A stretch of 64,000 bases of DNA, taken from positions 124,001-188,000 of IMG/VR virus record IMGVR_UViG_3300042895_001344. One strand, written 5' to 3'. The notes under the pieces were generated by a model. That model saw nothing but the letters and a program-made list of their open reading frames with translations. It had not been told where the DNA came from and did no database searches. The position numbers and the translations under genes were made by a program. Within the stretch, counting starts at the first letter, position 1. The number at the start of each line of letters is the position of its first letter. This document shows positions 13,235 to 23,061 of the stretch, in pieces.

Positions 13235-13973
13235 AGAAAGGGCGAAAAAACTCTACCCCAAATCCAATTCTAACTTGGACATCTTCTCCTGATGGGGTTC
13301 TTACTGTTTGGGTTAAATCTAACCCGGGTTTATTATCTTTTACAAATTTCCTAAAATCTTGTGAATCTTTAATTGGCATGGTTTCAATAAAACCTCTAAT
13401 TTTTAATGCGTCTCTCACCCCACCAACAGATTTAATCATCATCTCAAGTTGTTTGGTTATAACAGGTGCAACACCATTACCATTCCAACTCTCTTTAATT
13501 TTTTCAATTTCATCTTCTTGTTTTTGTGTTAAAAACTTGAACGTGATTTCCGTTTTACTTTTTTCTAAATAATGACCATATTCACCGTTTGTATCTTCTA
13601 CTAAATTAAAATCTTTTATTTTTAATGAACCTAAATCTACCTCAACGGTAAATTCATTTCCAGTTTTATCGTCTGTAATTGTTAAATTATAATCAGAACC
13701 AAATGCGGTATTTCTTAAAAAGATTAAAATTGCTTGTCTATCTTCCTCAACAATTTCTTCTATGTTTAAATCTTTATCTAAAATTTTTCTTTTTAAAAGT
13801 TCAGTAATAACGGTATTTGTATTTAAAAAACTTGGGGACGATAAAATGTTCTCATCTGAAGCCGTTAAATAAGCTACTCTTACCGATTTTTTCTTATTAG
13901 TATAATGAATACCTTTACTTGGTAATTCTATTACATCATAGGCAATCGCCGGGTCAATTCTAGTTTCTTCCAT
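13224..13973 (-). CDS. Tail/baseplate hub assembly chaperone (gp26/gp51-like, G-type)
   Basis: YDVIELPSKG...YLTASDENIL N-terminus, ends VEFFRPFYGI; lies between tube and tape measure genes. Confidence 0.7.
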   Translation of the reverse strand: MEETRIDPAIAYDVIELPSKGIHYTNKKKSVRVAYLTASDENILSSPSFLNTNTVITELLKRKILDKDLNIEEIVEEDRQAILIFLRNTAFGSDYNLTITDDKTGNEFTVEVDLGSLKIKDFNLVEDTNGEYGHYLEKSKTEITFKFLTQKQEDEIEKIKESWNGNGVAPVITKQLEMMIKSVGGVRDALKIRGFIETMPIKDSQDFRKFVKDNKPGLDLTQTVRTPSGEDVQVRIGFGVEFFRPFYGI

Positions 13974-14021
13974 AATACTATAATTTACTTAATAACTAGT
14001 TCAAAGTAAAGTTTTTAAAAA

Positions 14022-14056
14022 AGAAAAACCGATAATCTTGTGAACTATCGGTTTTC
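14022..14056 (-). terminator. Intrinsic terminator after tail tube gene
   Basis: 10-bp stem aaaaccgata (14025-14034) / tatcggtttt (14046-14055) with a T-tract on the minus strand. Confidence 0.8.
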
Positions 14057-14076
14057 GTATATGAAAATCTGTAATA

Positions 14077-14565
14077 TTAGTATATCAAAATACATCTATC
14101 CATTCTCAAAGAACATGTAATATTAGCTAATTCATCTCTGTTATAGTCTAATTCACCAAAGTTCAAGTCAGTTAAGAAACAGTTTTCTAATAACCATTTT
14201 TCAACTACTACTCCTGTTGGGTCTAACATCTCCAATTCAATATCCTTTTTATAACCTGCAGCATAACCCATACGACCTGTTACAGATTCAGCATGTAAAC
14301 GGAACCATTCCATTAAAGCTTGAGAAGCTGAAGGTCCAATTGGATCTCTAAAAGTCATTTTAATTTCATTCCACTCAAATCTACCTGCAACATATGTTGA
14401 TGTGTTCAGGAAAGGAATTGCAACTGAATTGATTTTAGCACTTGGTCTTGACGCTGCAGATACATACCATTCGTTTATACCCAAAGATGAGTTGAATCTT
14501 ACGATAAATCGGTTGACCCTTTTTGGTTCGTAAGGTGTCGGCATTTTCATTAATAAATCGGCCAT
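14077..14565 (-). CDS. gp19: Tail tube protein
   Basis: YEPKRVNRF...GRFEWNEIKMTFRDPI...AAGYKKDIELEMLDPTGVVVEKW...FGELDY; directly after the sheath gene. Confidence 0.9.
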   Translation of the reverse strand: MADLLMKMPTPYEPKRVNRFIVRFNSSLGINEWYVSAASRPSAKINSVAIPFLNTSTYVAGRFEWNEIKMTFRDPIGPSASQALMEWFRLHAESVTGRMGYAAGYKKDIELEMLDPTGVVVEKWLLENCFLTDLNFGELDYNRDELANITCSLRMDRCILIY

Positions 14566-14603
14566 ATTGTGTGTTTGTTAAGTTTTGTTAGTTATTTACT
14601 TTC

Positions 14604-14612
14604 TAATAAATA
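14604..14612 (-). promoter_or_regulatory. Late motif TATTTATTA
   Basis: Upstream of tube gene. Confidence 0.7.
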
Positions 14613-14660
14613 TATCCAAAAGGAAAATAATTTTATTTTAAATTAATTATCTGAAAAAGG

Positions 14661-14691
14661 TTGTTTATGTCAATTATTTTTCGTAGTTTTT
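14661..14691 (+). promoter_or_regulatory. Candidate host-type (Bacteroidota sigmaA-like) promoter pointing into the intergenic repeat element
   Basis: TTG (14661-14663), 20-nt spacer, TAGTTTTT (14684-14691), which fits TAnnTTT(G) imperfectly; no ORF downstream. Confidence 0.35.
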
Positions 14692-14696
14692 TACAG

Positions 14697-14786
14697 GCCC
14701 CAGTATCTAGTTCCAGTTTAATACTCTACTTTAATAAATAATATATCATTAATAAATACTAGAATATCTAGTTCCAGTATTCTGGG
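14697..14786. repeat. Intergenic repeat element
   Basis: 14-bp direct repeat TATCTAGTTCCAGT (14704-14717, 14765-14778), TTAATAAATA twice (14731-14740, 14749-14758), CCCAG/CTGGG inverted ends, AT-rich core. Confidence 0.8.
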
Positions 14787-14816
14787 TAAAGTATAATTAT
14801 TTTTTTGTTATACATA

Positions 14817-14832
14817 TGTTCCACGTGGAGCA
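14817..14832. promoter_or_regulatory. parS-like palindrome TGTTCCACGTGGAGCA
   Basis: 15/16 match to the chromosomal parS palindrome TGTTCCACGTGGAACA; intergenic and GC-rich in an AT-rich background. Confidence 0.55.
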
Positions 14833-14834
14833 TT

Positions 14835-14862
14835 AAAAAAGGGTACCATTTCTGATACCCTT
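14835..14862 (-). terminator. Intrinsic terminator after tail sheath gene
   Basis: Stem aagggta (14839-14845) / taccctt (14856-14862) followed by T6 on the minus strand; may be bidirectional. Confidence 0.7.
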
Positions 14863-14886
14863 CTTATTTTTATATCTCCTTTTAGA

Positions 14887-17871
14887 TTAGATATTTTCAA
14901 ATGAAGCTCCTGTTGGAGTAATAATGAATTCCACATCGATGTATTCAAGAGAACGAGTTGGTTTGATGTAAATCTTACCTCTCATTGTGTTTGCGTCGAT
15001 GTCTTCAGGATCGTTAGAAACTGTTACACGGAAGTCATACAAACCTCTTTCTTTCTTAATTGCATCCAAGATAGGGTTTACCAATCTTAAGAATTCATTT
15101 CTTACTTGGTCATCGTTTTGTTCAAACAATAATCTTACAGAAACTGCAGAAATTAACTTTCTTGCTCTTAATAACAATCTTCTTACGTTGATTCTATCCA
15201 AAGCGGATTCTCTAACTTGTAACGTTTTGTTACCCCAAATAATAGTACCTGTATCAGAGAATGTAGCGATTGGGTTAATTCTGTTCTTATATAATACGTC
15301 TCTATCGTCTAAAGTCAATTTTTTAGTTGCTTTGATAGCATTTATCAAACCTCTACTATAACCCGCAACTGCGAACCAAGGATAAGACACGTTGTCAGTT
15401 AAAGCAATATTCTTAACAACCTCACCTGTTGGTGGGATATATAATTGTGTTGCATTATCTGTATCTCTTACTTGAATCCAAGGCCAATATGTTGCCGAGT
15501 AGTTAGAATCTATACCTGCATTATCTAAAGCAGTAACAATATCAGTCGTTGCTGAAGGACCTGTGATATTTGGTGAGTTCATAATATATAATGAATCTGC
15601 TCTTTCAGTTTCAATCATATCAATCGCTTGATTAACTAATGAACTATGACGATCAAAGTTAATACCAGGTGTAGCAAATACGTTAATATCTACCGCTTCA
15701 GGATTTGAATATGTTTCAATACCTTGTAAGTAAGCGTAATAGTCAGAATTACCTACTGATTCACTAAACACTCCTCCGGGGGTTGTATGTCCTAACTTAT
15801 AAATAGATTTACCAAAAATATAACGATCGTCGTTAGTTCTTTCTGATCTGTATATATCCCAACCGTCTCTACCTCCGTAAACCGAAAAAGTGAATTTACG
15901 GAAATTAATATTAGTTAATTTATTATTACCATTATTATTAAGCTCATCTTGACCTTCTAAATCATATGGTGTTGTTTGGAAAGTTGTTGTTCCAGTAATT
16001 GTAGAGGCGTTTACAGACAAATGGAAACCAAATGTTTCTGTTGTTGCCATCTCACCTTTATATTTTAATAAATCTCTATCGAATCCAACAGCATCAGATA
16101 AACCTAACATAACTTTTCTTACCTTATCTCCACCTTCAATATTAGGTGAACCATTCACATCGTAAGTTTCAACATCACCCGCATCGTTATATTTTGTTTT
16201 GAATATTACATTACCTAATCCCATATTAATTCCTGATACAGTACCAAAGTTTTTGTTGTTTGCAAAACCTCTAAAACCAGCAGGAATAGCATCTACAGGT
16301 GCTCCGTCCGCCATAAGCAACATAATTCTTTTAGAAACTAACGCGTATTCACCATCAGATGTACCGATTTTTTTAGCTATATAACCTGGAGTATCTGGAT
16401 TCATAGAACATCTTGAATATTTTTCAAGAGCTACTTGATTCTCATCAGTATCGTTAAAATCACGAACCACTAAATCAAACTCCATAGTTTCTAAATTAAT
16501 ATTTTGAATATTGATTTTTACTTCAAAGTTAGCGGCCTCTCCATCGGAGATTGTAATAACTTGAAATAAATCAGCAACATTACCACCACGAACTTCAGAA
16601 ACAACCATCGGTGAAATTGTTGTATCCCATGGTTTTAAGTAATTATATGAATTAGAATCTTCTTCTGATTCATATGAAACGTCCATAGAAATACCTCTTA
16701 CTAATCCTCTTTCAAAGGCGGTTCCTAAATAATTAGGATATGATTCATGTACATATACCGGATAGTCACCTTTATCTTTATCAAATACATCAGTTCCTAA
16801 AACTTTAGAAATATATTTTGATGATGATCGATTTAATGAACAAACAAATTGTTTAACTCCACTTGTTGTACCTGTTACGTTGATTGAAAACTCACCCATT
16901 GGGTTTGTATTCATATCAGATCCCGTAACACCTGATAATATGAATTTATTATCATCCTTAACTTCATGTATTAATGTTTGTCCGCTATATATACCTCTTG
17001 ATCTTATTGCTGCAACCACTACATTATGGTATTCATCGGCTAAAAGTGCTTCCCAATCAAATTGAGTAATTGACCATTTGTTAGTTGAATTTGTAAATGT
17101 GAATAAATAAGAATAAATACCATTTACACCGTCACCGTCTGGAGGAGTGACCAAACCATCAGATTGGTGATGCATTGTATTCCACCATTCTTTTGTATTA
17201 TTACTACTACTATATTTTTCTCCAGATAATGGAGAAACTAATTCTGTACCATTTCCAACAATTGCACTATCTTCTGTTCCTTCCGTATTTCTTCCTATCC
17301 AAAAATATTCATTAGTTGATCCAGTAGTTGAACCTTCATAATCACCGTAAATATCTTTTAAATATGTTACAATATCAGTACCATCAACAGATGTTACACC
17401 TGACAAATGAGCAATAATTTCATTTAATGAATTTATTGAAGATCCGGTTTCTGTTGTTGTAATTCCTGTTGTTGTAATTGTTACACTACCAACTTCATTA
17501 GTTACGCCAGAATACCCTTCTAAAATTACACCACCTACGGTTTTAATACCGAATGTTTTATATGGTCTATAACCTGTAAGACCCAATACTCTCGTTACGA
17601 ATAATTGATTAGATTCTTGTAAATATGATTTTGCAACATATCCTAATTCATATTTTGGATTACCATCACTGTACTTTTCAGGTGAAGTAGATCCAAAATA
17701 CAATTTGAATTCGTCAAAATTTGAAATTAAAATAGGTTCGAAAGCTGGACCTTTTAAAGTCTCACCAGCTAAACCTAATGTTGTAACACCTACACTCTGT
17801 GCTACAAATGTTAAATCGAGCTCGGATGTATAAACACCTGGAGACACGAAAACTCTGTTATTACTTGCCAT
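14887..17871 (-). CDS. gp18: Contractile tail sheath protein (994 aa)
   Basis: N-terminal VFVSPGVYTSELDLT; C-terminal YPWFAVAGYSRG, RINPIATF, IWGNKTLQ, LDRINVRRLL, IKPTRSLEYI. Confidence 0.95.
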   Translation of the reverse strand: MASNNRVFVSPGVYTSELDLTFVAQSVGVTTLGLAGETLKGPAFEPILISNFDEFKLYFGSTSPEKYSDGNPKYELGYVAKSYLQESNQLFVTRVLGLTGYRPYKTFGIKTVGGVILEGYSGVTNEVGSVTITTTGITTTETGSSINSLNEIIAHLSGVTSVDGTDIVTYLKDIYGDYEGSTTGSTNEYFWIGRNTEGTEDSAIVGNGTELVSPLSGEKYSSSNNTKEWWNTMHHQSDGLVTPPDGDGVNGIYSYLFTFTNSTNKWSITQFDWEALLADEYHNVVVAAIRSRGIYSGQTLIHEVKDDNKFILSGVTGSDMNTNPMGEFSINVTGTTSGVKQFVCSLNRSSSKYISKVLGTDVFDKDKGDYPVYVHESYPNYLGTAFERGLVRGISMDVSYESEEDSNSYNYLKPWDTTISPMVVSEVRGGNVADLFQVITISDGEAANFEVKINIQNINLETMEFDLVVRDFNDTDENQVALEKYSRCSMNPDTPGYIAKKIGTSDGEYALVSKRIMLLMADGAPVDAIPAGFRGFANNKNFGTVSGINMGLGNVIFKTKYNDAGDVETYDVNGSPNIEGGDKVRKVMLGLSDAVGFDRDLLKYKGEMATTETFGFHLSVNASTITGTTTFQTTPYDLEGQDELNNNGNNKLTNINFRKFTFSVYGGRDGWDIYRSERTNDDRYIFGKSIYKLGHTTPGGVFSESVGNSDYYAYLQGIETYSNPEAVDINVFATPGINFDRHSSLVNQAIDMIETERADSLYIMNSPNITGPSATTDIVTALDNAGIDSNYSATYWPWIQVRDTDNATQLYIPPTGEVVKNIALTDNVSYPWFAVAGYSRGLINAIKATKKLTLDDRDVLYKNRINPIATFSDTGTIIWGNKTLQVRESALDRINVRRLLLRARKLISAVSVRLLFEQNDDQVRNEFLRLVNPILDAIKKERGLYDFRVTVSNDPEDIDANTMRGKIYIKPTRSLEYIDVEFIITPTGASFENI

Positions 17872-17908
17872 TGATTTTTGTTTGGTTAATTAATTTTATT
17901 ACTTATCT

Positions 17909-17916
17909 TATAAATA
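17909..17916 (-). promoter_or_regulatory. Late motif TATTTATA
   Basis: Upstream of sheath gene. Confidence 0.75.
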
Positions 17917-17986
17917 TCTTTGTTTTTATCAAAGATTTCCCAACTTTTCTTAAAAAGATAGTTATTTATCTTTTAATATCTTTTAT

Positions 17987-18145
17987 ATGGAAAACACTCA
18001 AAAAAACGTTAAAATAAGTGGGAAACACCACGAAATGTTAAAAAATTACTGTGATAAAAACGGTTTAAAAATCTATAAAGTTTTAGAAAAACATATAGAA
18101 GAACTTTGTAAACCTAAAAAGAAGGACATATACGGGGATGATTAA
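17987..18145 (+). CDS. Small ribbon-helix-helix-like DNA-binding protein missed by the track (52 aa, MENTQKNVKISGKHHEMLKNYCDKNGLKIYKVLEKHIEELCKPKKKDIYGDD)
   Basis: Translated by hand. Strand-helix-helix pattern (VKIS...HEMLKNYC...LKIYKVLEKHI); TATTTAT at 17963-17969. Confidence 0.65.
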   Translation: MENTQKNVKISGKHHEMLKNYCDKNGLKIYKVLEKHIEELCKPKKKDIYGDD

Positions 18146-19404
18146 TAAAGATAAACAAAATCTAAAGTGGCACCGAATACAGGAGCACTTGTTAGTGTTA
18201 TTTGTTTTTGTCCTGTTATTTCATATCCCTCATCACTAAATTCAATAAGTCCATTTGTGGTAACACTAATAACACTATTAATCTTTTCTTGTAGATCAAA
18301 AACTAAGTTGACTCCATTGAAATTAAAACTTTCACGACCAACCTGTAGTTCATTACCGTTTTGGTCATACATTTTGTTATTTCTACCTTTATAGTAACTT
18401 ACAACAATTACATCACCTTGTAATGGGGTTCCGCTAAAATTTATGTTTGATAATCCCCCAAAATGAGAATGTGAATAATGTACGTCTTTTTCCTGTACAA
18501 TTCCATTAATTGATACGTTAAATAAAACTGTTATATTCTCACCTACACTATATATTGTACTAGTACCATTTGATATTAATGTGGCTAACGTTATATCAAT
18601 TGTTTTAGATATATATTTTTTAGTTAAACTACCTCCACCTTTCATCGATTCATTTACGATAAACGCTCGACTAATAGCTGGTTTAACCTCAAATTCATCA
18701 CTATCAATTAAAAACCCTAACATAGTACATTTATATGTTTGCATATAAAATCTACGACCATCAATTGTTTCCATAGGTGTATTGTCTTCTATTGTGTCTA
18801 AAACAATTGGAATATAATGACCTTTAACTTGAGTGTAATCTTGTCTAGATGAAAAATTTTGTAAAACTAATTTATTAAATTTATTTAAATCTCTAAACTT
18901 ATTACAAACAATAGTAATGTCGTATGTAATATCACATGGAATCGGTTGTGGTATTTTATAAATGTCAGCCCCCATAGAATTACCATTCCAAGTTGGAACC
19001 GTTGCATAGTGAAACTGATGTCTATCGGGAATAGTTCTTTGTATTGATGGGTTTGTACCAAACTGTACGTCAGGTTTTCTAATGATTGTAATAAATGGTA
19101 ATTTTACATTACCGTCAGAATCTGAAAATTCCCAATTGTTTGAAAATTCACCCCATCTTTGAATTGTTAATATTTTATCAATAACAGGTATTTGTACACC
19201 ATCAGATACAACTTTAAATGTATTTTTTACATAATCCAACATACCCCTATCTAAATCATCATGTAAAATAGAGTCAGGTAGAAAAGAATCGGATTTTGTA
19301 ATCATATCCAATAATTCCTCTCTTCTTTTTAATATACCTTCACCTTGGTAAGTATCCTTACCGCCGTAAACGTTGATCATGTTTTTTCTTTTAGGTATTC
19401 CCAT
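18142..19404 (-). CDS. Tail terminator/completion protein (gp15-like) with two appended beta-domains
   Basis: KLPFITIIR...PQPIPCDITYDITI...YIPI pattern; neck region. Probable start MGIPKRK at 19404, right after the upstream stop (track start is 19443). Confidence 0.6.
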   Translation of the reverse strand: MGIPKRKNMINVYGGKDTYQGEGILKRREELLDMITKSDSFLPDSILHDDLDRGMLDYVKNTFKVVSDGVQIPVIDKILTIQRWGEFSNNWEFSDSDGNVKLPFITIIRKPDVQFGTNPSIQRTIPDRHQFHYATVPTWNGNSMGADIYKIPQPIPCDITYDITIVCNKFRDLNKFNKLVLQNFSSRQDYTQVKGHYIPIVLDTIEDNTPMETIDGRRFYMQTYKCTMLGFLIDSDEFEVKPAISRAFIVNESMKGGGSLTKKYISKTIDITLATLISNGTSTIYSVGENITVLFNVSINGIVQEKDVHYSHSHFGGLSNINFSGTPLQGDVIVVSYYKGRNNKMYDQNGNELQVGRESFNFNGVNLVFDLQEKINSVISVTTNGLIEFSDEGYEITGQKQITLTSAPVFGATLDFVYLY

Positions 19405-21907: not shown

Positions 21908-21922
21908 AATAGAAATATAAGA

Positions 21923-21930
21923 TATTTATA
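21923..21930 (+). promoter_or_regulatory. Late motif TATTTATA
   Basis: Upstream of neck gene. Confidence 0.75.
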
Positions 21931-21945
21931 AGAATAAATCAAATT

Positions 21946-23061
21946 ATGTCTCAAATTATTTCACAAGCGGAAAAAGATAAATTATATACTCAGGTATTCC
22001 ACCTTTTAGGTATGCCTGTTCGTGGTATTGAACTTACCGAAGAACAAATGGATACCTTCATGGAATTGGCTTTATCTGAATACGAACAATACGTTAGTGA
22101 TTGGTTGATTGAATCTCAATGGTCGGCACTTGCGGGATTAGATATAGATACACAATCATTATCAAGAGCGTTTACAACAAGAAGTTTAGATTACGAAACA
22201 CAATATACTCACTCATACTCCAAAATTGTAGGTTTACAAGCTGGTGGTGATTGGGAACTAAAAAAGGATTATTTTACACTTTCAGGAGAAACCCAAGTTT
22301 ATGAAATTCCTGCTGGTCGTGAAGTAAATGAATTATTATGGTTTGCTCGTGCTGAATTAAGTGATTCATTTGTTGATCCGTTTATGGCGGGATTTGGTGG
22401 TCTTGGTGGATTAGGTTTCGGTGGTGCCGGTGGATTTGCACAGATGGGTAATGCTGGTTCTTATTTTATGACGCCAGCATTTGACTTATTATTAAGAATG
22501 CAAGATAGAAGTATTAAAAATAGACTAATTGGTGGTGATTTGACTTATAGAATAACTGCGGGTCCTGAAGGTAAAAAATTAGTTCATTTATATAATGTAC
22601 CGGGTGGTAAATTTGATTTTGGTTCAATAAAACAAAAAAATTATAATGTTTGGTATTGGTATTATGATACTATGGATAGAGACACCTGTCTTAAAGATAA
22701 TAAGGATGTAATTAAATTACCGTCCGATGTTGATACTGAACAATTGGTATGGGAAAACTTAAATAAACCAGCTCAAAACTGGGTTAGAAAGTATTTGATT
22801 GCTTATTCTAAAGAAGGTTTAGGTCGTATTTGGGGTAAATTTTCGGGTGATTTACAAGTTCCTGACAGTCAAGTTAAGTTAGATTATCAATCTTTAATTA
22901 CGGAAGGTAAAGATGAGAAATCTAAATTAGTTGAAGAACTTATGGCGAGATTGGAAAGACTCCGCCCCGACAAACTTCTTGAAAGAAAAGGTGCCGAAGC
23001 GGAGAATCTTAATAAGGCACTTAAGTTTAGAGCGATGCCTTCATCTATTATTGTTATCTAA
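21946..23061 (+). CDS. Neck / head-tail adaptor protein (gp13-like)
   Basis: LGMPVRGIELTEEQMD N-terminus; WVRKYLIAYSKEGLGRIWGKF...DYQSLITEG C-terminus; late motif upstream. Confidence 0.75.
   Translation: MSQIISQAEKDKLYTQVFHLLGMPVRGIELTEEQMDTFMELALSEYEQYVSDWLIESQWSALAGLDIDTQSLSRAFTTRSLDYETQYTHSYSKIVGLQAGGDWELKKDYFTLSGETQVYEIPAGREVNELLWFARAELSDSFVDPFMAGFGGLGGLGFGGAGGFAQMGNAGSYFMTPAFDLLLRMQDRSIKNRLIGGDLTYRITAGPEGKKLVHLYNVPGGKFDFGSIKQKNYNVWYWYYDTMDRDTCLKDNKDVIKLPSDVDTEQLVWENLNKPAQNWVRKYLIAYSKEGLGRIWGKFSGDLQVPDSQVKLDYQSLITEGKDEKSKLVEELMARLERLRPDKLLERKGAEAENLNKALKFRAMPSSIIVI

What the first reader, a model, noticed from the sequence alone, without database searches (positions are those of the whole stretch)
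14817..14832. Chromosome-type parS site in a phage intergenic region
Seen: TGTTCCACGTGGAGCA, one mismatch from the palindrome TGTTCCACGTGGAACA, in non-coding DNA between the sheath terminator and the repeat element. It is the only such site I noticed in the window, and no parA/parB gene is present here. Known: host ParB-CTP loads at parS sites of this consensus, which are normally origin-proximal. Inference: the phage may recruit host ParB (and SMC/ParA) to position or segregate its DNA, or to titrate ParB from the host chromosome.
Basis: partly seen in the sequence, partly recalled or inferred. Interest (0 to 1): 0.75.

Follow-up and report, generated by a model that had tools for sequence, protein, structure and literature searches.

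The report
Host-type parS site in a jumbo phage
A lake jumbo phage carries, just after its tail-sheath gene, a conserved copy of the DNA "centromere" sequence (parS) used by its likely Flavobacteriaceae hosts, and relatives also encode a ParB-like protein, so these viruses seem to use a ParB/parS module that nobody has tested.

Summary
The 16-mer is real: TGTTCCACGTGGAGCA at 14817-14832, 15/16 to the parS palindrome. It is the only such site in the 217-kb contig; about 0.0003 are expected per window.

It lies in non-coding DNA directly after the sheath gene's intrinsic terminator. Of 91 distinct sheath-tube spacers from related lake phages, 69 keep it at this position. The family consensus is the perfect TGTTCCACGTGGAACA. 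That is the chromosomal parS of Flavobacteriaceae, the likely host family.

It is conserved as sequence, not as a hairpin. There is no covariation, the sense-strand hairpin is weak, and it sits beyond the terminator.

Constraint is looser than in hosts. Only 11/69 keep both arms intact, but 65/69 keep at least one. The window copy has one T-to-C change in one arm, a variant that still bound ParB in a published in vitro assay.

The near-complete relatives examined encode a two-domain ParB/KorB/Noc-like protein and no ParA. One lineage has four perfect parS sites flanking that gene instead.

Most likely this is a selected binding site for a ParB-family protein. The binder (host ParB or the phage protein) and the role are untested.

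The parts
14817..14832 (.). parS-like 16-bp palindrome. It reads TGTTCCACGTGGAGCA on the + strand and TGCTCCACGTGGAACA on the gene-sense strand. One arm (GTGGAACA in sense) is perfect, the CACGTG core is intact, and the other arm carries T3->C.
   Evidence: A homologous element sits at the same place in 69 of 91 distinct related spacers, with consensus TGTTCCACGTGGAACA. This consensus is identical to Flavobacteriaceae chromosomal parS.
14835..14866 (-). Intrinsic terminator of the sheath gene: AAGAAGGGTATCAGAAATGGTACCCTTTTTT. The stem sequence differs between relatives and a stem is kept in most. The palindrome starts 2 nt after the T-tract.
   Evidence: (I2) and 78: the 66-nt stretch that holds the terminator and the palindrome folds at -20.6 kcal/mol, z -4.6. 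Alignment of relatives.
14887..17871 (-). Tail sheath gene (994 aa).
   Evidence: phrog_23 tail sheath, E 1e-61. Covered by contigs from four RNA (metatranscriptome) libraries.
14077..14565 (-). Tail tube gene (162 aa).
   Evidence: phrog_4542 tail tube, E 4e-28. Covered by contigs from four RNA (metatranscriptome) libraries.
14699..14787 (-). Repeat element next to the site. It has two copies of ACTGGAACTAGATA (sense) at 14704-14717 and 14765-14778, bracketed by inverted CCCAG/CTGGG. It is not shown to belong functionally to the parS-like site.
   Evidence: It expands to a 15-nt tandem array of 9 or more copies in relative G070. Zero RNA-contig depth at 14629-14809 in four runs.
14603..14613 (-). 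Conserved promoter-like box ATATTTATTAG, 37 nt upstream of the tube start codon. It marks the downstream end of the regulatory spacer.
   Evidence: The same motif lies upstream of the sheath gene (17907-17917, -) and of the gene at 21946 (21922-32, +), and nowhere else in 217 kb. It is nearly invariant in relatives.

Best explanation
The 16-mer is a chromosomal-type parS: a double-stranded DNA binding site for a dimeric ParB-family helix-turn-helix protein. Selection keeps it in a family of T4-like freshwater jumbo phages that probably infect Flavobacteriaceae.

Shown:
- It is positionally conserved, immediately after the sheath terminator.
- Its family consensus is letter for letter the parS of the likely host family.
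- It evolves as a sequence, not as a base-paired stem.
- Nearly every copy keeps at least one perfect half-site.
- Relatives encode a ParB/KorB/Noc-like two-domain protein and no ParA.
- One lineage has moved or duplicated the site into a four-site cluster around that gene.

Inferred: a ParB-family dimer binds here, either host ParB or the phage ParB-like protein (phrog_12305), or both. On perfect copies it would load as a CTP clamp and spread over the sheath-tube region. The window's copy has one perfect arm, an intact CACGTG core and a single T-to-C change in the other arm. It should still be bound, but more weakly.

The downstream purpose is not resolved. Candidates are organising or positioning phage DNA, partition in a carrier state, control of the adjacent late promoters in the manner of KorB, or titration of host ParB.
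For: (1) Chance is unlikely: 2.7e-4 expected per window, and it is the only site in 217 kb.

(2) Of 91 distinct related spacers, 69 keep it (3 mismatches or fewer) right after the terminator. The consensus is the perfect TGTTCCACGTGGAACA. Perfect copies occur in the complete 310-kb genome G001 and in G002, G003, G004 and G069, as the only perfect copy in each.

(3) Host link. The phage uses no Shine-Dalgarno sites and has A-rich leaders. A tube homologue of 83% identity lies on a 248-kb contig of a Flavobacteriaceae MAG. That MAG has parA-parB and two perfect TGTTCCACGTGGAACA sites. Of 61 Flavobacteriaceae genomes, 53 have 1-3 perfect sites, mostly this variant.

(4) The positions that vary freely in the phages include those that vary in host sites. 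These are positions 1 and 16, and Y/R at 5 and 12.

(5) Inner positions change about 3.3 times per site on the tree. Tube third-codon positions change 8.8 times and flanking DNA 10-20 times.

(6) 65/69 copies keep at least one intact heptamer arm. A tree-aware simulation expects 23 +/- 10 copies with both arms broken; 4 are observed (P <= 0.002). This fits published ParB behaviour. In PMC5450999, single-arm changes including T3C keep high binding in vitro, most symmetric changes abolish it, and a half-parS keeps 49% of the signal.

(7) It is not a structure. There is no covariation (76.5% paired against 76.7% in shuffles). The sense-strand hairpin is -4.1 kcal/mol, no better than shuffles. It lies beyond the terminator.

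(8) CACGTG is avoided genome-wide (3 observed, about 17 expected) yet kept here. The same holds in G002 and G069.

(9) A ParB-like protein is present in G001, G002, G003, G068, G069 and G070. The model has pLDDT 89.7. The N-domain aligns to the ParB CTPase fold with Z 12, and both domains align to KorB, ParB-parS and Noc.

(10) G070 lacks the sheath-tube site but has four perfect inner 14-mers at 484, 1614, 3097 and 4208, on both sides of its ParB-like gene. L323 shows the same arrangement. The 248-kb phage contig of G005 has neither the site nor the gene.
Against: No binding data exist, and the complex prediction was not run for protein with DNA.

Constraint is much looser than in host chromosomes, where the inner 14-mer was invariant in both sites of all 20 genomes looked at. 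Only 11/69 phage copies keep it, 38/69 have lost the CACGTG core, and P. aeruginosa data say the core matters (PMC4368675).

Conservation is asymmetric. Positions 7-8 changed 1 and 3 times, while their mirror positions 10 and 9 changed 6 and 11 times. A symmetric dimer does not predict this.

About 20 of 91 spacers lack the element, so it is dispensable.

The window's contig shows no ParB-like gene, although it is only 65% complete.

Of 80 ParB-like loci, 78 have no parS within 600 nt.

The host assignment rests on co-binning and translation signals, not on an isolate.

The site was picked because it resembles parS. A coincidental match of an unrelated palindrome cannot be fully excluded for a very large scan.

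The tree comes from one 486-nt gene and ignores recombination.
Confidence: 0.6

Rival explanations
1. It is a stem-loop acting in RNA or single-stranded DNA. For example, it could be a second hairpin that helps terminate or stabilise the sheath transcript. On this view the likeness to parS is a coincidence.
For: The element is a palindrome next to a terminator. The perfect version folds at -7.9 kcal/mol. The central four bases change faster than the arms. Two apparent compensatory pairs exist: GTTCT...AGAAC in L153 and GTTTC...GAAAC in L139.
Against: There is no covariation signal. Paired cells are 76.5% against 76.7% in shuffles, and the covariation score is reached by 48/500 shuffles. The commonest arm change, T3->C in 18 of 69 copies (about 6 events), gives an uncompensated C.A on the sense strand. 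The window's sense hairpin is -4.1 kcal/mol, and 36/200 shuffles fold as well. The element lies after the terminator's T-tract, so it is mostly untranscribed, and no T-run follows it. The supposed loop bases A7 and C8 are nearly invariant. The GTTTC...GAAAC 'compensation' is also just the other canonical parS variant. The exact match to host parS, and the four-site cluster in G070, are left unexplained.
Confidence: 0.08
2. It is the operator of some other phage or host DNA-binding regulator that controls the sheath-tube regulatory spacer. It would resemble parS only by chance or by convergence.
For: The spacer is packed with other conserved boxes. These are the ACTAG-type repeats, AAAACTACGAAA, the palindrome TTGACAnnnGTCAA and the promoter-like ATATTTATWAG. 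The asymmetric conservation, with the left half and GGAAC more conserved than positions 9, 10 and 16, would suit an asymmetric binder. A conserved TATAA box lies 2-8 nt downstream.
Against: A 14-bp palindrome would match the host family's parS at every specified position with probability of about 1e-4. This is my estimate: 4^-7, times 2 for the Y allowed at position 5. The freely varying positions include the ParB-tolerant ones. In G070, perfect parS sites recur in a wholly different context, next to the ParB-like gene. No other copy of the motif exists at other promoters of the contig.
Confidence: 0.15
3. In the window's own phage the site is a decaying relic. An ancestral parS is no longer used in this lineage, and the 15/16 match is inherited rather than selected.
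For: The window's mismatch is at an inner position that did not vary in the orthologous second parS site of any of the 20 host genomes examined with up to 3 mismatches allowed. The same single-arm T3C change in B. cenocepacia parSc1 lost in vivo incompatibility (PMC5450999). The element has been lost several times in the family (6 presence/absence changes on the tree). No ParB-like gene was found on this contig.
Against: The T3C variant is shared by 13 or more distinct spacers of the window's clade. In these the other 13 inner positions stay intact while the flanks diverge. Second hits in the other arm are strongly depleted. CACGTG is retained here although it is otherwise purged from the genome. 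T3C kept near-wild-type binding in vitro (PMC5450999).
Confidence: 0.12

Closest known systems
Chromosomal parS of the ParABS system (TGTTNCACGTGNAACA; the Pseudomonas and Flavobacteriaceae variant is TGTTCCACGTGGAACA)
   Same: The phage family's consensus 16-mer is identical to it. Positions 1/16 vary freely and positions 5/12 vary as Y/R, as in host sites. It is a non-coding double-stranded DNA palindrome, present in one or a few copies per replicon.
   Different: It sits on a virulent-type T4-like jumbo phage, not near a chromosomal origin. The phage has no ParA and no canonical ParB. The inner 14-mer is not invariant: 11/69 copies are intact, and the window copy is T3C in one arm. The element is dispensable in several lineages.
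Partition cassettes of plasmid-prophages (P1, N15 and mycobacteriophage parABS)
   Same: A phage genome carries a centromere-like site, and in relatives also a ParB-family gene. In G070 the sites flank that gene.
   Different: Those systems have their own ParA and full-length ParB. Their parS differs from the host's and they serve a stable plasmid prophage. Here there is no ParA. The ParB-like protein is 251 aa and its model shows no separate dimerisation domain. The site copies the host sequence. No lysogeny functions were looked for or seen.
KorB-OB and Noc-NBS (ParB-family CTP clamps used for regulation or membrane tethering rather than ParA-driven partition)
   Same: The phage protein's predicted fold aligns over both domains with KorB, Noc and ParB-parS structures (Z 10-12). 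There is a single palindromic site next to strong promoters and no ParA partner.
   Different: The site sequence is parS, not OB (TTTAGCSGCTAAA) or NBS. No KorA-like partner or membrane-targeting helix was examined. The function is untested.
Half-parS binding by ParB in P. aeruginosa and other species (GTTCCAC / GTTTCAC)
   Same: 65/69 phage copies keep at least one perfect heptamer. Some relatives carry an extra half-site nearby (L055, L056, L059).
   Different: Half-site binding does not support spreading in the published work (review PMC7022226). The excess of GTTCCAC elsewhere in the phage genome is explained by codon phase.

Membership tests
Chromosomal-type parS (ParB loading site) | 16-bp palindrome matching TGTTNCACGTGNAACA | tested here: met
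   The window copy matches 15/16. The family consensus and copies in G001-G004 and G069 match 16/16.
Chromosomal-type parS (ParB loading site) | Inner 14-mer GTTYCACGTGRAAC intact, as in every natural site of the likely host family | tested here: not met
   The window has T3C (A14G on the + strand). Only 11/69 distinct phage copies are intact. In hosts, both sites of all 20 Flavobacteriaceae genomes are intact when up to 3 mismatches are allowed. A single-arm T3C still bound ParB in vitro in PMC5450999.
Chromosomal-type parS (ParB loading site) | A ParB that recognises this sequence is present in the same cell | tested here: inconclusive
   The candidate host MAG has parA-parB and the same parS, but the host is inferred. 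Relatives encode a ParB-like protein of unknown specificity. None was found on the window's 65%-complete contig.
Chromosomal-type parS (ParB loading site) | Specific, CTP-dependent ParB binding and spreading at the site | not testable with these tools
   Complex prediction did not fold the protein-DNA job. This needs EMSA, SPR or ChIP.
Chromosomal-type parS (ParB loading site) | Conserved as double-stranded sequence under purifying selection | tested here: met
   Inner positions change 0-6 times (position 9: 11 times). Third-codon positions change 8.8 times and flanks 10-20 times. Double-arm hits are depleted. There is no pairing covariation.
Complete parABS partition cassette (P1/N15-like) | parA and parB genes adjacent to the site | tested here: not met
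   No ParA-type ATPase was found in G000, G001, G002 or G068. The ParB-like gene lies about 150 kb from the sheath-tube site in G001 and G002. Only in G070 and L323 do parS sites flank it.
Intrinsic terminator / selected RNA hairpin | Stem kept by compensatory changes, and a T-run after the stem | tested here: not met
   Covariation is not above shuffles. The C.A mismatch in 18/69 copies is uncompensated. No T-run follows the element. The window's sense hairpin is -4.1 kcal/mol.
ParB/KorB/Noc protein family (for the phage protein phrog_12305 of relatives) | ParB CTPase N-domain with a GxxRxxA-type box, plus a central helical DNA-binding domain | tested here: met
   The motif DGQHRxxAA is invariant. 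Residues 6-100 align to the ParB N-domain with Z 12 and rmsd about 2 Angstrom. Residues 7-205 align to KorB, ParB-parS and Noc with Z 10-11. The Pfam ParB_N score is only 13-15 bits, below the cut-off.

The most novel reading that the evidence does not exclude
A widespread family of T4-like jumbo phages of freshwater Flavobacteriaceae has copied its host's centromere sequence. Together with a phage-encoded, ParA-less ParB/KorB-like CTP-clamp protein, it would use that sequence to load ParB-family clamps on phage DNA. This would hijack or compete with the host ParABS/SMC machinery. Possible effects are positioning or partitioning of the phage genome (for example in a carrier state), timing of late-gene expression, or draining ParB from the host chromosome. 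Orphan host-type parS sites may be a more general phage strategy. At least 120 IMG/VR contigs hold a perfect 16-mer, and these are enriched in non-coding DNA.
Probability: 0.3. Interest if true: 0.85.

Novelty: new variant of a known kind. Interest (0 to 1): 0.68.

Why it matters
ParB-parS is the near-universal bacterial centromere system. Among phages it is known only from plasmid-prophages, which bring their own complete and distinct parABS. A lytic-type jumbo phage family that keeps a copy of the host's own parS, together with a minimal ParB-like protein and no ParA, would be a new way for viruses to engage host chromosome-organising machinery. Five full-text searches that included 'parS' found no report of such a case.

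The idea can be tested directly with synthetic DNA and two proteins. The natural variants form a ready-made mutational series: the perfect site, the single-arm T3C site, the core variants CACATG, CACGAG and CACGCG, and the four-site cluster. Two practical uses follow. The site could serve as a host-prediction signal for uncultured phages. Phage ParB-like proteins may also give compact parS-binding tools.

Tried and rejected
- Small ORF starting at the ATG that overlaps the site (MLHVEH...). The start codon is missing in 14 of 69 copies. Open lengths are often only 6-14 codons. The reading frame relative to conserved downstream DNA shifts between relatives. Rejected.
- Escape from a CACGTG restriction enzyme as the cause of core mutations. 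The genomes that avoid CACGTG most strongly (G000 3, G002 6, G069 5) keep the core at this site. G068, with 12 copies elsewhere, has lost it. Not supported.
- Genome-wide excess of the half-site GTTCCAC (70 copies, rank 2 of 420 permutations). 45 of the 70 lie in one antisense codon phase (nGT-GGA-ACn), so this is codon usage. Rejected as a signal.
- Rfam. Only a sub-threshold sRNA hit on the terminator.
- Other GTTCC-N4-GGAAC or AAAACTACGAAA copies in the contig are inside genes.
- Complex prediction of the phage ParB-like dimer with the perfect site was not folded. This is no evidence either way.
- Strict co-occurrence of the ParB-like gene with the sheath-tube site. G070 has the gene but not that site; its parS sites lie elsewhere. 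78 of 80 ParB-like loci have no parS within 600 nt.
- Neighbours of the ParB-like gene are SprT-like, GP88 and DUF932. There is no thymine dioxygenase, so it is probably not the 5mYOX-activator type of PMC13229309.
- The isolated Flavobacterium phage immuto has a 45-nt sheath-tube spacer and no parS.
- Metatranscriptome contigs cover the sheath and tube genes but give no depth at 14629-14809. They cannot resolve the 16-mer itself.
- Contigs carrying ParB-like genes from the same samples do not overlap the window's contig.

Full report
**Observation.** The + strand reads TGTTCCACGTGGAGCA at 14817-14832, one mismatch from TGTTCCACGTGGAACA. The window is bases 124001-188000 of a 217,142-bp IMG/VR virus record. 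That record is 31% G+C and estimated 65% complete. It holds no other match with up to 1 mismatch to TGTTNCACGTGNAACA. At this base composition the expected number of such matches is 2.7e-4 per window.

All neighbouring genes are on the - strand. The tail sheath gene is at 14887-17871 (phrog_23) and the tail tube gene at 14077-14565 (phrog_4542). The rest of the window carries T4-type genes: Gp23 capsid, Gp20 portal, terminase and B-family polymerase.

Read on the sense strand, the order is as follows. First comes the sheath stop codon. Then comes a strong terminator hairpin with a T6 tract (14835-14866). Then come AA and the site, TGCTCCACGTGGAACA.

**Conservation.** Two scans with tube proteins returned 160 loci from lake and freshwater viral contigs, with 83-100% tube identity. 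Together with the window's own spacer they give 91 distinct sheath-tube spacers. Of these, 69 carry a copy with 3 or fewer mismatches at the same place, 0-30 nt after the terminator T-tract.

The consensus is the perfect 16-mer. Perfect copies are scattered over the tube tree. They occur in a complete 310-kb genome with terminal repeats (G001) and in G002, G003, G004 and G069. It is the only perfect copy in each of these genomes; G002-G004 also hold one 1-mismatch match with a broken core elsewhere. About 20 spacers lack the element and have other sequence there.

On the tube tree the inner 14 positions changed on average 3.3 times each. Positions 4, 13 and 14 never changed. Tube third-codon positions changed 8.8 times and flanking spacer columns 10-20 times. 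The element is therefore under purifying selection.

**Hairpin or DNA site.** On 45 distinct copies, the seven-pair stem shows no covariation. Paired cells are 76.5% against 76.7% in shuffles, and the covariation score is reached by 48 of 500 shuffles.

The commonest arm change, T3->C, is the window's change. It arose about six times and gives an uncompensated C.A on the sense strand. The window's sense-strand hairpin is only -4.1 kcal/mol, and 36 of 200 shuffles fold as well.

The element lies beyond an intrinsic terminator and no T-run follows it. RNA-library contigs cover the sheath and tube genes but show zero depth at 14629-14809. They do not resolve the 16-mer itself. A short ORF starting at the overlapping ATG is not conserved. 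The evidence favours a double-stranded DNA site.

**Host and host parS.** The phage makes no use of Shine-Dalgarno sites. Nine of 177 genes have one, which equals background, and leaders are A-rich. This is typical of Bacteroidota (my own knowledge). The nearest cultured relatives by tube protein infect Microcystis, Flavobacterium and Rhodothermus.

A tube homologue of 83% identity sits on a 248-kb contig of a MAG titled Flavobacteriaceae bacterium. That MAG has a canonical parA-parB operon and two perfect TGTTCCACGTGGAACA sites 1.9 kb apart. In a sample of 61 genomes of that family, 53 have 1-3 perfect sites, mostly this exact variant.

I then fetched the locus from 20 genomes, 19 of which had a single perfect site, and allowed up to 3 mismatches. 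In every genome the second site differs only at positions 1 and 16, or Y5/R12. The inner 14-mer is thus invariant in hosts.

The phage consensus therefore equals the likely host family's centromere. The positions that vary freely in phages (1, 16, Y5, R12) include the host-tolerant ones.

**Where the phage site departs from host parS.** Only 11 of 69 distinct copies keep both arms intact. Thirty-two keep only the left arm, 22 only the right, and 4 neither. Thirty-eight have lost CACGTG, through the variants CACATG, CACGAG, CACGCG, CATGTG and others. Mirror positions are unequally conserved.

Double-arm damage is strongly depleted. Placing the observed numbers of changes at random on the tree gives 23 +/- 10 copies with neither arm intact, against 4 observed (P <= 0.002).

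This matches published ParB behaviour for the B. cenocepacia chromosomal parS (PMC5450999):
- Single-arm changes, explicitly including T3C, keep near-wild-type binding in SPR imaging, although T3C lost in vivo incompatibility.
- Symmetric changes at all pairs except 1-16 and the 5-12 transition abolish binding.
- A half-site retains 49% of the signal.

In P. aeruginosa the CACGTG core matters for affinity (PMC4368675).

CACGTG is otherwise purged from this genome (3 observed, about 17 expected) but is kept at this site. The same pattern holds in G002 and G069. Restriction avoidance therefore does not explain the core variants. Where the core is present, it appears to be retained by selection.

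**A phage ParB-like protein.** The window and its incomplete contig have no ParB or ParA gene. Relatives G001, G002, G003, G068, G069 and G070 encode a protein of about 251 aa. It matches phrog_12305 ('ParB-like partition protein') over its full length and has an invariant DGQHRxxAA box.

Its AlphaFold model has pLDDT 89.7. Residues 6-100 align to the ParB CTPase fold with Z 12 and rmsd about 2 Angstrom. Residues 7-205 align to KorB, the Caulobacter ParB-parS complex and Noc with Z 10-11. So the model has the N-domain plus the central DNA-binding domain.

Homologues of 33-45% identity occur on many contigs, including contigs from the same samples as the window's closest relatives. The window's phage probably has one in its missing third; this is inference. 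No ParA-type ATPase is present in the near-complete genomes.

**The G070 lineage.** G070 (tube 78% identical) has no palindrome at the sheath-tube spacer. There it has an expanded 15-nt tandem array instead. It does have four perfect inner 14-mers at 484, 1614, 3097 and 4208. These lie on both sides of its ParB-like gene (634-1398). Each sits at the centre of a composite inverted repeat, GTTTTGGCAGTA...parS...TACTGCCAAAAC. L323 shows the same arrangement.

All four sites vary only at positions 12 and 16, which is the host-grade tolerance. Conversely, the 248-kb phage contig in MAG G005 has neither a parS nor the ParB-like gene.

Perfect host-type parS thus recurs in two unrelated genomic contexts of one phage family, once as a cluster around a ParB-family gene. 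This makes coincidence very unlikely and ties the site to ParB-family biology. The coupling is not universal, however. Of 80 ParB-like loci, 78 have no parS within 600 nt.

**Interpretation.** The best-supported reading is that the element is a genuine, selected parS-type binding site for a ParB-family dimer. I give this a confidence of about 0.6.

Which protein binds is open. Host ParB should recognise perfect copies simply because the sequence is its own centromere. The phage ParB-like protein is the natural candidate given G070. The two are not exclusive.

The window's copy is expected to be a weaker but still bound site. It has one perfect arm, an intact core and T3C in the other arm. That variant is stable across 13 or more distinct spacers of its clade.

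The biological role is inferred only. Candidates are organisation or positioning of phage DNA, partition in a carrier state, KorB-like control of the adjacent late promoters, or ParB titration.

Rival readings and my confidence in each:
- RNA or single-stranded DNA hairpin: 0.08.
- An unrelated regulator's operator: 0.15.
- A relic with no function in this lineage: 0.12.

**Comparison and novelty.** By sequence the site is a member of the chromosomal parS kind. It differs in context: a virulent-type jumbo phage, no ParA, a minimal ParB-like protein, and a location after the sheath terminator. It also differs in its relaxed constraint.

It is unlike the P1, N15 or mycobacteriophage parABS cassettes, which are complete and use their own parS. 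Five full-text searches that included 'parS' found no description of host-type parS on lytic phages. The survey of the ParB-CTPase fold notes many uncharacterised phage ParB-like proteins (PMC12704722).

In the 80 loci I examined, only two belong to this family and none has a canonical parA or parB nearby. Twenty-two of the 80 sites are non-coding, against 10.7% expected (P = 2e-5). This hints that orphan parS may be more general in phages.

**Limits.**
- No binding experiment was done.
- The host is inferred.
- The tree comes from one short gene.
- Fitch counts ignore recombination.
- Copies were defined as having 3 or fewer mismatches, which slightly inflates apparent conservation.
- The window's contig is incomplete.

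Noticed in passing
window 14699-14787 (and L400:1240-1385): The 'repeat element' next to the site has two copies of ACTGGAACTAGATA (sense) bracketed by inverted CCCAG/CTGGG. In relatives its length and content vary widely. In G070 it becomes a tandem array of 9 or more 15-nt units (ACTAGAACTAGATAT) directly upstream of the tube promoter region. It looks like an iterated protein-binding array, and no RNA contigs cover it.
   Followed up: partly
window 14603-14613 (-), 17907-17917 (-), 21922-21932 (+): The motif ATATTTAT(A/T)AG occurs only three times in 217 kb. Each copy lies 14-37 nt upstream of a start codon: tube, sheath and the gene at 21946. It is nearly invariant in relatives, so it is a candidate family-specific late promoter. 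Its reverse complement contains the T4 late consensus TATAAATA.
   Followed up: partly
window 14646-14693 (-): Two more conserved boxes lie in the spacer. One is AAAACTACGAAA (14679-14690). The other is TTGACA-N16-GATAAT (14646-14673), a promoter-like site whose first hexamer is part of a palindrome TTGACAnnnGTCAA in many relatives.
   Followed up: no
L403:464-4242 (G070 contig start): Each of the four parS sites of G070 sits in the middle of a composite element of about 56 nt. It has 12-nt inverted arms GTTTTGGCAGTA / TACTGCCAAAAC. This could be a cruciform, a second binding site or a mobile cassette. The arms are absent from the window's genome.
   Followed up: partly
L007, L013, L115, L120, L129, L400 (sheath-tube spacers of relatives): Several relatives have an extra ORF between the sheath and tube genes. 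Its C-terminus reads like ...YDRIWDCGSMKFELNL. It resembles the free-standing homing-endonuclease insertions of T4-like phages. In L007 and L013 the palindrome follows its stop codon directly.
   Followed up: no
whole contig G000 (includes window): There is strong general avoidance of 6-bp palindromes. GCATGC, GGGCCC and TGCGCA occur 0 times against 6-7 expected, AGGCCT once against 11, and CACGTG 3 times against 17. This suggests pressure from restriction systems. CACGTG avoidance differs among relatives (G001 has 29 copies).
   Followed up: partly
In the 80 loci examined, no parA or parB was detectable nearby with Flavobacteriaceae queries. 27.5% of the sites are non-coding, against 10.7% of bases. 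Orphan parS may be common in phages or phage-plasmids.
   Followed up: partly
L170:1901-1916 (inside the ParB-like gene of G001): ATTTCCACGTGCAACG is a 3-mismatch parS-like sequence lying inside the ParB-like coding region. It recalls the parS inside B. subtilis spo0J, but it may be chance.
   Followed up: no
L055, L056, L059 (spacers of relatives, 12-20 nt downstream of the palindrome): One sub-clade has an extra intact half-site next to the full palindrome. It is GTTCCAC in direct orientation in L055, and GTGAAAC in L056 and L059.
   Followed up: no
G000 contig 214836-216035 (outside the window): A cluster of five tRNA genes (Thr-TGT, Asn-GTT, Met-CAT, Ser-TGA, Glu-TTC). There are none inside the window.
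   Followed up: no
window 14086-14628 and 14810-17886: Four lake metatranscriptomes contain contigs of the sheath and tube genes at 90-100% identity. There is little or nothing over the downstream baseplate-hub region (13362-14085) or upstream of the sheath gene (17887-18248). This is consistent with separate, strongly expressed late units.
   Followed up: partly
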